Positions 25,030 through 25,533 of a stretch of 64,000 nt of DNA are shown here, piece by piece. The stretch comes from Octopus sinensis (taxonomy: Eukaryota). The notes beneath the pieces are model-generated. The model saw only the letters and a list, made by a program, of their open reading frames with translations. It made no database searches and was not told the origin of the DNA. The position numbers were made by a program, and so were the translations under genes. Location of the stretch: NCBI RefSeq assembly GCF_006345805.1, contig NC_043013.1, positions 8,680,001 to 8,744,000 of the forward strand. The letters run 5' to 3'. Positions within the stretch are counted from its first letter, which is position 1. The number at the start of each line of letters is the position of its first letter.

Positions 25030-25533
25030 AAGATGAGGGAGTGGTTAGTCGACCACTGTATTTAACAGCGTTATTAGTTATGATACATAGAACATATATA
25101 GTGGAAAATTAAGACAAGAGTCAGTGTCCTTGTGAACTTGTGTTTATCTTAATTGTCAACTATATATATATATATATATATGTATATAGTTGACCAAGAA
25201 CCACCATTAATTTCTAAATGCGGAAGTCTTGAAGTTACATTTCTCTACAGTCCCGAAGAGAATACAATGAAAATAACAATCTTGCAAGCTCAAGAAATCT
25301 CAAGTAAAGACAGGGGTGGTGCTAATAGTGCCCAAGTCTGAATACTCCTGTTACCAACAAAAAAACAAAGATTCAAAACCAAAATTAAACCACATATATA
25401 TATATAGTTGACAATTAAGATAAACACAAGTTCACAAGGACACTGACACTTGTCTTAATTTTCCACTACATATATTCTATGTATCATAACTAGTAACACT
25501 GTTAAATACAGTGGTCGACTAACCACTCATCTT
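25030..25533. repeat. Long inverted repeat enclosing the duplicated exon
   Basis: 25039-25160 is the reverse complement of 25407-25528 with 5 mismatches. Inner (TA)n tracts on both sides; outer aagatgag/ctcatctt also pair. Confidence 0.95.
25193..25392 (+). pseudogene. Partial duplicate of the Syt14 C2A exon (copy of 24100-24299)
   Basis: 200 bp at offset 1093 with 3 differences: G>A at 25197 (silent), C>T at 25300 (Pro>Ser), C>T at 25339 (CGA>TGA stop). Lacks both native splice sites. Confidence 0.95.

What the first reader, a model, noticed from the sequence alone, without database searches (positions are those of the whole stretch)
25030..25533. Host exon fragment captured inside a fold-back inverted repeat, 1.1 kb downstream of the exon it copies
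Seen: 200 bp of the Syt14 C2A exon (24100-24299) is recopied at 25193-25392 with 3 transitions, one a CpG-type CGA>TGA stop. It is bracketed by ~122-bp arms (25039-25160 / 25407-25528, 5 mismatches) with (TA)n on the inner sides. Left junction: gtcaac(TA)n-tg-tata-gttgac is a mini snap-back that joins the exon at an 'ac' microhomology. Right junction: the exon sequence leaves at 'ca' into the reverse complement of the left TA tract and arm. No convincing TSD (gaattggag vs gaagctgac). Inference: serial template switching seeded by a (TA)n hairpin (FoSTeS/MMBIR or polymerase-theta-like), or a Pack-MULE/Foldback-like element that captured a neighbouring exon. Either is a route to exon shuffling in a TA-rich genome. 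Divergence (~4% arm-arm, 1.5% copy-exon) fits one single old event.
Basis: partly seen in the sequence, partly recalled or inferred. Interest (0 to 1): 0.9.

Follow-up and report, generated by a model that had tools for sequence, protein, structure and literature searches.

The report
Exon fragment in local fold-back duplication
A 200-base piece of a synaptotagmin exon was copied 1.1 kb downstream into its own intron, next to an inverted copy of part of an old repeat already sitting there, most likely as a scar of error-prone repair of one DNA break; this is a clean natural example of a known kind of mutation, not a gene-capturing transposon.

Summary
Bases 24100-24299 recur at 25193-25392 with 3 transitions, one of them CGA>TGA, and these are the only two copies in the 2.7-Gb genome. 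The copy lies between inverted arms that really span 25030-25182 and 25393-25537.

The arm sequence is multicopy, but only because the right arm is part of an old ~306-nt dispersed repeat ("RF", minus strand, 25393-25607).
- In other RF copies, homology runs straight through the arm's outer edge. In the window only the right arm has that continuation.
- The left arm abuts a different, truncated repeat ("LF") and there is no target-site duplication.
- The hairpin inside each arm, the GTCAAC and the (TA)n are RF's ordinary 3' hairpin terminus and microsatellite tail. They were not made by the event.
- None of 57 sampled RF loci has a comparable young inverted duplication or cargo.
- The resident RF copy is much older (nearest relative 85-91%) than the arm duplication (96%).

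So Pack-MULE/Foldback capture is rejected. Local break-repair or replicative template switching fits: an inverted copy of the adjacent repeat, a 12-nt snap-back, and a 200-nt templated copy of the upstream exon.

The fragment lacks both splice sites and carries a stop codon, so its exon-shuffling value is low. This is a known kind of event, of modest interest.

The parts
24072..24351 (+). Source exon. It encodes the first half of a C2 domain of a synaptotagmin-14/16-like gene. The donor segment is 24100-24299.
   Evidence: AG|G acceptor and G|GT donor read directly. Open frame of 93 codons. Pfam C2. Homolog named synaptotagmin-14/16.
24792..25035 (+). Truncated copy of a very abundant dispersed repeat ('LF'). 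It forms the left flank of the structure.
   Evidence: 4069 first-look candidates at 77-84% identity. Other LF copies continue past the equivalent of about 25035 with GCTTTGTGCCAGGTGATGAG..., which is absent from the window near the structure.
25030..25182 (+). Left arm: the new inverted copy of 25393-25537. It contains RF 78-155 in forward orientation (25040-25117, blast; about RF 68-155 once the AAGATGA extension to 25030 is counted, by eye), a filler, RF 163-132 inverted, then (TA)10 and TG.
   Evidence: IR 96%. RF mapping. Outer flank is LF, not the RF continuation. Three of the four polarisable substitutions are derived in this arm.
25183..25194 (+). 12-nt TATATAGTTGAC. It is a direct copy of 25401-25412 and the reverse complement of 25155-25166, so it is the real snap-back segment. 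Its last two bases (AC) overlap the exon copy.
   Evidence: In the window the 12-mer occurs only at 25183 and 25401, and its reverse complement only at 25155.
25193..25392 (+). Copy of exon bases 24100-24299 in sense orientation, with 3 transitions including CGA>TGA. It lacks both native splice sites.
25393..25537 (+). Right arm: the original template. It is the inner part of the resident RF copy together with its CA(TA)6 tail.
   Evidence: It is contiguous with the rest of the RF copy to 25607, as in other family members.
25393..25607 (-). Resident old copy of the ~306-nt RF dispersed repeat. RF 1-155 maps to 25604-25450, the family-typical 3' hairpin (RF 132-163 inverted) to 25431-25400, and the microsatellite tail to 25406-25393.
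   Evidence: 89% identity to the family consensus. Nearest genomic relatives are 85-91% identical. The hairpin terminus plus microsatellite tail is seen in 14 of 57 family loci.
26948..27108 (+). Next exon (coordinates approximate), the second half of the same C2 domain. It shows that the structure lies inside a 2.6-kb intron.
   Evidence: 79% nucleotide match to the second ORF of the distant-relative contig L045, and the frame continues ...EDLMNMGVRFRLYGCERMRRE....

Best explanation
This is the scar of a local, non-transposon DNA rearrangement: break repair or replication restart with several rounds of microhomology-primed copying.

Starting state (inferred). The intron held a copy of repeat LF and, downstream, an old minus-strand copy of repeat RF. 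RF's hairpin terminus and CA(TA)n tail pointed towards the exon.

The event (inferred). A break or stalled fork arose at the edge of that (TA)n tail.
1. The left end was eroded back into LF to about 25035, which removed whatever lay in between.
2. Its 3' end primed on the RF copy at a short shared AGATG(A) and copied about 150 nt backwards through the hairpin terminus and the TA tract. This made the left arm.
3. It then snapped back in the self-complementary (TA)n and copied 12 nt (TATATAGTTGAC).
4. It jumped by a 2-nt 'AC' match to the exon 1.1 kb upstream and copied 200 nt.
5. It was finally joined, with no or minimal homology, to the other side of the break at CA(TA)n.

The mirror-image order, with synthesis starting from the right-hand end, explains the same product.

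What is shown and what is inferred. Shown: the architecture, which arm is the original, the absence of transposon hallmarks, and the relative ages. Inferred: the break position, the order of template switches, and the enzymes involved.

Outcome. The product is an inert pseudo-exon inside an inverted repeat with a 210-nt spacer.
For: Which arm is the original. Other RF copies continue outwards past the arm edge (...CCAGTCAGCTTCCAGTAT|AGTGGTTAG...). The window's right-arm flank at 25538-25607 matches that continuation. The left arm's flank is LF.

Uniqueness. The exon fragment occurs only twice in the genome. In 57 RF loci no inverted pair covers RF below position 130 except L047, whose arms are only 80% alike.

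Relative age. The arms are 96% alike, whereas the resident RF copy is 85-91% identical to its nearest relatives and 89% to the consensus. RF therefore inserted long before the duplication.

Real and old. Each arm has its own derived substitutions.

Junctions. No TSD. There is an 'AC' overlap at 25193-4. AGATG is shared by LF's expected continuation and the RF copy at 25031-25035. The 12-mer is a snap-back copy. LF's continuation is missing, which fits an accompanying deletion.

Local donors. Both donors lie within 1.3 kb and are intact.

Experimental precedent. Yeast breaks acquire fold-back inverted duplications and complex templated insertions. Fragments have medians of about 50-150 bp, with 0-4 bp microhomology at the break ends and 2-11 bp between inverted pieces (PMC11724301).
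Against: No empty allele, sister-species sequence or raw read could be examined, so the ancestral sequence and the deletion are inferred.

The LF/arm junction is ambiguous over 25030-25038, and the 4-nt indel there is unexplained.

LF may already have been truncated before the event.

Microhomologies of 2-5 nt are weak evidence individually.

The sample of RF copies is 57 out of at least 285 first-look candidates.

Gene conversion between the arms could make them look younger than they are.
Confidence: 0.78

Rival explanations
1. Two separate events of the same general kind. First a simple fold-back made a spacer-less palindrome (left arm, TG|CA, right arm). Later the unstable palindrome broke at its centre of symmetry and was repaired with the 12-nt snap-back and the 200-nt exon copy. 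That insertion stabilised it.
For: The 12-mer plus exon copy sits exactly between the complementary TG (25181-2) and CA (25393-4), which is the symmetry centre. RF's own long hairpins show independent changes at their centres in different copies: the centre lies near RF 300 in L012, near 200 in L017 and near 168 in L018. This shows that palindrome centres are unstable in this genome. The arms show slightly more divergence per site than copy versus exon (5 substitutions against 3).
Against: The divergence difference is not significant (binomial p = 0.28-1.0). The TG may simply be an A>G change in a (TA)14 tract, in which case there is no exact centre. One compound event is more economical.
Confidence: 0.25
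2. A Pack-MULE-, Foldback- or MITE-like transposon whose terminal inverted repeats are the arms and which captured a neighbouring exon.
For: The arm sequence is multicopy (at least 34 hits). The structure is an inverted repeat with cargo.
Against: Family homology passes through the arm's outer edge and is present on the right side only. There is no TSD. The left arm ends inside RF at about position 68, not at a family terminus. None of 57 family loci has a young inverted pair or cargo. The family is not organised as paired arms over this region.
Confidence: 0.03
3. A reverse-transcriptase product: one retroposition event in which the enzyme copied RF RNA, switched to nascent synaptotagmin pre-mRNA and then snapped back.
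For: The exon copy is in sense orientation and comes from the host gene, whose nascent RNA would be present locally. A 12-nt direct repeat flanks the exon copy.
Against: The RF copy is far older than the duplication (85-91% against 96%). The resident RF is an ordinary old family member. There is no A-rich tail on the exon copy. The 12-mer is explained as a snap-back of the adjacent palindrome.
Confidence: 0.03
4. An assembly artefact, such as a chimeric or fold-back long read.
For: No reads could be inspected. Palindromic chimeras do occur in long-read libraries.
Against: The arms differ at 5 sites plus two indels, and both arms carry derived changes. The copy differs from the exon at 3 sites. 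A technical fold-back would be an exact copy and would not splice in 200 nt from 1.1 kb away at microhomologies.
Confidence: 0.04

Closest known systems
[quoted passage not shown]
   Same: The inverted copy lies next to its template and turns around at a short self-complementary sequence. There is an additional templated fragment from elsewhere. Microhomology is 0-7 nt and there is no TSD. Fragment sizes are in the 50-200 bp range.
   Different: This is a fixed or segregating germline event in an animal intron, not an induced break. The turn-around is a (TA)n microsatellite that forms the tail of a hairpin-ended repeat. The second fragment is a coding exon from 1.1 kb upstream. The enzymes are unknown.
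FoSTeS/MMBIR serial replicative template switching (Lee, Carvalho and Lupski 2007; Hastings et al. 2009; cited from my own knowledge, not read here)
   Same: Several template switches within a small neighbourhood, in both orientations, at microhomologies, with an accompanying deletion.
   Different: The scale is about 150-200 nt per segment, against kilobases to megabases in the human disease cases. A replicative origin cannot be distinguished from a break-repair origin with sequence alone.
Polymerase-theta-mediated end joining with templated insertions (from my own knowledge)
   Same: Snap-back and nearby-template copying at break ends using 2-6 nt microhomology.
   Different: Typical theta inserts are under about 30 nt. 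Here the segments are 12, about 150 and 200 nt, which suggests a more processive polymerase for the long ones.
Pack-MULE and Helitron gene-fragment capture
   Same: A host exon fragment lies between repeat-derived sequences.
   Different: The arms are not element termini. There is no TSD and no other copies. The donor is the adjacent exon of the same gene. Membership was tested and not met.
Centre-modifying rearrangements of long palindromes (from my own knowledge of yeast and mouse palindrome instability)
   Same: Spacer-less long palindromes are unstable and survive after central deletions or insertions. RF hairpins here show variable centres, and the window's inverted repeat has a 210-nt spacer.
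   Different: It is not known whether a spacer-less intermediate ever existed at this locus.

Membership tests
Pack-MULE / Pack-type TIR transposon | The arms are the termini of a multicopy element, so homology among copies stops at the arm's outer edge on both sides. | tested here: not met
   In about 28 other copies homology continues at least 75 nt beyond the arm edge. In the window this continuation is present only outside the right arm.
Pack-MULE / Pack-type TIR transposon | A target-site duplication flanks the element. | tested here: not met
   GTAGAATTGGAG on the left against GAAGCTGACTGG on the right. The right flank is RF sequence.
Pack-MULE / Pack-type TIR transposon | Other copies have the same arm pair with different cargo or none. 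| tested here: not met
   Among 57 RF loci with +/-1.5 kb of flank, inverted pairs involve only RF positions 130 and above (the family hairpin). L047 is the one exception, and its arms are only 80% alike.
Foldback (FB) elements | Long terminal inverted repeats built of subrepeats, mobile, multicopy and flanked by a TSD. | tested here: not met
   The arms are a segment of a non-palindromic repeat plus its hairpin tail. There is no subrepeat array and no TSD.
Helitron/Helentron capture | 5' TC and 3' CTRR ends with a subterminal hairpin, insertion between A and T, and cargo inside the element. | not tested
   RF has a 3' hairpin and microsatellite-rich flanks, but its termini and insertion sites were not analysed. 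The exon copy lies outside the resident RF copy.
Fold-back inversion plus templated insertion at a break (repair scar) | The inverted copy is adjacent to its intact template, and the turn-around is at a short self-complementary sequence. | tested here: met
   Left arm against right arm, with the turn-around in (TA)n.
Fold-back inversion plus templated insertion at a break (repair scar) | The inserted fragments are copies of nearby intact donors, and the locus is unique in the genome. | tested here: met
   The donor exon is 1.1 kb upstream and intact. There are only two copies genome-wide.
Fold-back inversion plus templated insertion at a break (repair scar) | Junctions have 0 to about 11 nt of microhomology and no TSD. 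| tested here: inconclusive
   AC (2 nt) at 25193-4, AGATG(A) at 25030-25037 (ambiguous), and 0 nt at 25392/25393. These are compatible, but short matches are weak evidence.
Fold-back inversion plus templated insertion at a break (repair scar) | An ancestral empty allele exists (LF directly, or after a further stretch, followed by CA(TA)n-RF). | not testable with these tools
   No same-species or sister-species sequence was reachable. The only relative found (L045) is too distant: its exon is 74% identical and it has a single exon copy and a 1.44-kb intron.
LINE-mediated retrocopy | The insertion is the same age as its flanking element, has a 3' tail and a TSD, and lands at a random genomic location. 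| tested here: not met
   RF is much older than the duplication. The exon copy has no tail. It lies 1.1 kb from its source.
Synaptotagmin-14/16 C2A exon | It encodes a C2 domain, and orthologs are annotated as Syt14/16. | tested here: inconclusive
   The C2 domain is confirmed. One of 24 homologs is named synaptotagmin-14/16. A second C2-like exon about 27 kb downstream supports the 'A' designation. Full-length orthology was not established.

The most novel reading that the evidence does not exclude
Hairpin-ended, (TA)n-tailed RF-type repeats may be recurrent fragile sites in this TA-rich genome, repeatedly triggering fold-back synthesis and templated capture of nearby sequence, exon pieces included. 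The family's own 'RF + inverted RF' architecture and the window's second-level fold-back would then be two outputs of one ongoing process that scatters exon fragments through introns.
Probability: 0.1. Interest if true: 0.6.

Novelty: new member of a known kind. Interest (0 to 1): 0.3.

Why it matters
It is a base-resolved natural example, in a large repeat-rich animal genome, of a compound repair scar: an inverted duplication, a snap-back and a templated insertion of coding sequence.

It shows how an old hairpin-ended repeat with a (TA)n tail can seed such an event inside a neuronal gene.

It is also a useful caution for scans. An inverted repeat whose arms are multicopy and which carries host cargo is not necessarily a Pack-type transposon. 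The deciding test is whether family homology stops at the arm edges.

Its functional consequence is probably nil. The copied piece lacks splice sites and has a stop codon. The one possible effect is that a strong 150-bp inverted repeat inside an intron could influence pre-mRNA folding or local genome stability.

Tried and rejected
(1) Transposon capture. Rejected on the boundary, TSD and family-survey tests.

(2) L018, and later L047, as second examples of the window's structure. L018 is an ordinary RF copy with the family hairpin and a centre deletion. L047 is two old RF copies whose arms are only 80% alike.

(3) Searching for LF's missing continuation downstream in the window, to reconstruct the ancestral site. 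It was not found near the structure. The only hits were unrelated SINE-like repeats further out in the flanks.

(4) Independent confirmation or an empty allele from public assemblies, through exact-ORF look-ups of the copy ORF and the exon ORF. Nothing is on record.

(5) The closest public homolog contig (L045). It is too distant to serve as an empty site. It shows only a single exon copy and a shorter intron.

(6) A single retroposition event. Rejected on relative ages.

(7) A tRNA-derived head in the neighbouring repeats. No tRNA was detected in 22000-27500.

(8) A literature search to identify the assembly failed on search syntax and was not repeated. The organism was not established. The genome size, the SINE-like repeats and the TA richness suggest a cephalopod, but that rests on my memory only.

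(9) A mis-typed translate reference and an early script that could not find its files gave no data.

Full report
WHAT IS THERE

The finding's description holds. A 200-nt direct repeat joins 24100-24299 to 25193-25392 at 99% identity. Inverted arms at 25039-25173 and 25394-25528 are 96% complementary (sequence read). The three exon/copy differences are all transitions: 24104 G>A (synonymous), 24207 C>T (Pro>Ser) and 24246 C>T at a CpG, which turns CGA (Arg59 of the exon's frame) into TGA.

The exon spans 24072-24351 on the + strand, with an AG acceptor and a GT donor. It encodes the start of a C2 domain (Pfam PF00168), and one public homolog carries the name synaptotagmin-14/16. The next exon, at about 26948-27108, continues the same C2 domain. 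A further C2-like exon lies at 51230-51346. The structure therefore sits, in sense orientation, in a 2.6-kb intron that splits the first C2 domain. The copy covers only the interior of the exon, so it has neither native splice site.

EXTENT OF THE ARMS

- Outwards they share AAGATGA (25030-25036 against 25531-25537) across a 4-nt indel (GGGA is extra in the left arm).
- Inwards they run through the TA tracts to a complementary TG (25181-2) and CA (25393-4): GTCAAC(TA)10TG against the reverse complement of CA(TA)6GTTGAC.

Between the arms lie 12 nt, TATATAGTTGAC (25183-25194), followed by the exon copy, which overlaps the 12-mer by 'AC'. The 12-mer is an exact direct copy of 25401-25412 and the reverse complement of 25155-25166.

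As single-stranded DNA the region folds at -149 kcal/mol, z = -21.8 against shuffles.

THE KEY TEST: UNIQUE OR MULTICOPY ARM

The window's genome (2.72 Gb, 13,516 contigs) holds the exon fragment exactly twice, both in this window. The arm, however, has at least 34 matches at 74-83% identity, mostly over arm positions 11-88.

I aligned the family members with their flanks. The arm turns out to be an internal piece of a dispersed repeat of about 306 nt, which I call RF. In other copies, homology continues at least 75 nt outwards beyond the arm's outer edge (...GAGTTAGAGCTCCACGTAGATTATCATTATCCAGTCAGCTTCCAGTAT|AGTGGTTAGTC...).

In the window this continuation is present only outside the right arm. 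RF positions 1-155 map to 25604-25450 on the minus strand at 89% identity, and the segment 25531-25630 has its own large set of relatives at 85-91%. The left arm maps to RF 78-155 at 25040-25117 by blast, or about RF 68-155 once the AAGATGA extension to 25030 is counted by eye. Its outer neighbour is a different and very abundant repeat, LF (24792 to about 25035; 4069 first-look candidates).

Other LF copies continue past that point with GCTTTGTGCCAGGTGATGAG.... That sequence does not occur near the structure.

It follows that the right arm is the resident original and the left arm is a partial inverted copy of it. The arm ends are not element ends, and there is no target-site duplication.

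WHAT BELONGS TO THE REPEAT FAMILY AND WHAT TO THE EVENT

In 14 of 57 sampled RF loci, RF is followed by an inverted partial RF copy. The outer end of that inverted copy usually lies near RF position 130-147, reading ...TTATCTTAATTTTCCACTACATA, and in most of the loci inspected it is followed by a microsatellite: (CA)n, (GT)n or (TA)n. The turning point of these family hairpins varies between copies, from about RF 300 in L012 to 200 in L017 and 168 in L018. This is as expected if a long palindrome suffers independent central deletions.

The window's copy is one of these. RF 132-163 lies inverted at 25400-25431 and, copied into the left arm, at 25136-25167. 'GTCAAC TATATAT' is the diverged family terminus TTCCAC TACATAT. 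The small hairpin inside each arm, the GTCAAC and the (TA)n tract therefore pre-date the event. Only the 12-mer at 25183-25194 is a new snap-back product.

RELATIVE AGES

The resident RF copy is old. Its nearest relatives are 85-91% identical and it is 89% identical to the consensus. The arms are 96% identical to each other and share private features: the filler GTCAGTGTCCTTGTGA, a 6-nt deletion relative to the consensus, and the AAGATGA variant. The inverted duplication is thus much younger than the RF insertion, which excludes one-step retroposition or transposition of the whole block.

Polarising the arm differences against the consensus shows three derived changes in the left arm (25069, 25074, 25098), one in the right arm (25474, opposite 25093) and one that cannot be assigned. 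Both arms have therefore evolved independently since the duplication. This argues for a real, old event and against an assembly chimera.

Five substitutions over the two arm lineages against three in the 200-nt copy is statistically indistinguishable from one shared date (p = 0.28-1.0). It equally allows two events.

MECHANISM (INFERENCE)

The simplest history starts with LF ... [unknown] ... CA(TA)n-RF (minus strand) in the intron. A break or stalled fork arises at the edge of the (TA)n tail of a hairpin-ended repeat, which is a plausible fragile spot.
1. The left end is lost back into LF.
2. Its 3' end pairs at AGATG(A) with the RF copy about 145 nt inside the other side of the break. It copies back towards the break through the hairpin terminus and the TA tract, which makes the left arm.
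3. The new end snaps back within the self-complementary TA run and copies 12 nt (TATATAGTTGAC).
4. It moves by an 'AC' (or gapped TTG-AC) match to the exon 1.1 kb upstream and copies 200 nt.
5. It is joined without homology to the CA(TA)n end.

A mirror-image order starting from the right end gives the same product. So does a two-step history, in which a spacer-less palindrome forms first and later breaks at its centre and is repaired with the exon insert. Sequence alone cannot separate these versions.

The class of event is well documented experimentally. Yeast breaks acquire fold-back inverted duplications and complex templated insertions, often as two inverted pieces from one locus. Fragments have medians of about 50-150 bp, with 0-4 bp microhomology at the break ends and 2-11 bp between the inverted pieces (PMC11724301). 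Human and yeast fold-back inversions are described in PMC3907307 and PMC7467729.

COMPARISON WITH TRANSPOSON CAPTURE

Every testable defining feature of a Pack-type or Foldback element fails.
- The arm edges are not family termini.
- There is no TSD.
- No other copy has these arm ends or any cargo among the 57 loci. The only inverted pair that reaches RF 1-125 (L047) has arms just 80% alike, which means two old insertions.

LIMITS

I could not reach reads, other individuals or sister species. The one related contig found (L045, from a public read set) is distant, with 74% nucleotide identity in the exon. It shows only that its orthologous intron is 1.44 kb long and has a single exon copy. The organism was not identified with the tools. 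The RF survey covers 57 of at least 285 candidates.

VERDICT

The template-switch or repair reading is supported and the transposon reading is rejected. The 'exon shuffling' significance is weak, because the fragment lacks splice sites, carries a stop codon and shows one synonymous, one missense and one nonsense change. This is a clean new instance of a known mutational class.

Noticed in passing
window 25393-25640; loci L005, L006, L009, L012, L014, L017, L018, L030, L048, L050, L057, L073: RF is a dispersed repeat of about 306 nt. About a quarter of its copies (14 of 57) carry an inverted partial copy of their own 3' part. That inverted copy usually ends near RF 130-147 and, in most of the loci inspected, is followed by a microsatellite: (CA)n, (GT)n or (TA)n. 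Microsatellite also precedes RF position 1 in most copies. The class of the element was not determined (hairpin-ended SINE-like, MITE-like or Helentron-associated?).
   Followed up: partly
L012, L017, L018, L014, L027 compared with window 25118-25135: The turning point of the RF family hairpin differs from copy to copy (about RF 300, 200, 168 and 155), while the outer end stays near RF 132. This looks like independent central deletions of one long palindrome, which is a sign of palindrome instability in this genome.
   Followed up: partly
window 24792-25035: LF is an extremely abundant repeat (4069 first-look candidates at 77-84% identity). Its copy here is cut off at the junction with the left arm. 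Its class was not determined.
   Followed up: partly
window 22400-22592 and 23869-24030 (also about 29431-29596): These are copies of another SINE-like repeat. They match the flanks of unrelated loci (L043, L034) at 81-95% identity, so some copies are young. One copy ends only about 40 nt upstream of the C2A exon's acceptor site.
   Followed up: no
window 25030-25041 against 25529-25537: There is a 4-nt indel (GGGA is extra in the left arm) right at the outer end of the inverted repeat. It could be junction slippage during the event or a later mutation. It makes the exact LF/arm breakpoint ambiguous.
   Followed up: no
window 51230-51346 (+): A weak C2-like coding match (51% identity to C2 homologs), probably an exon of the second C2 domain of the same gene. 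If so, the introns of this gene run to tens of kilobases.
   Followed up: no
L045 (Logan SRR9969974 contig, 2853 nt): A distant relative has the same two C2A exons separated by only 1.44 kb, against 2.6 kb in the window. It is very AT-rich (28% GC). The extra intron length in the window is largely repeats plus the duplication.
   Followed up: partly
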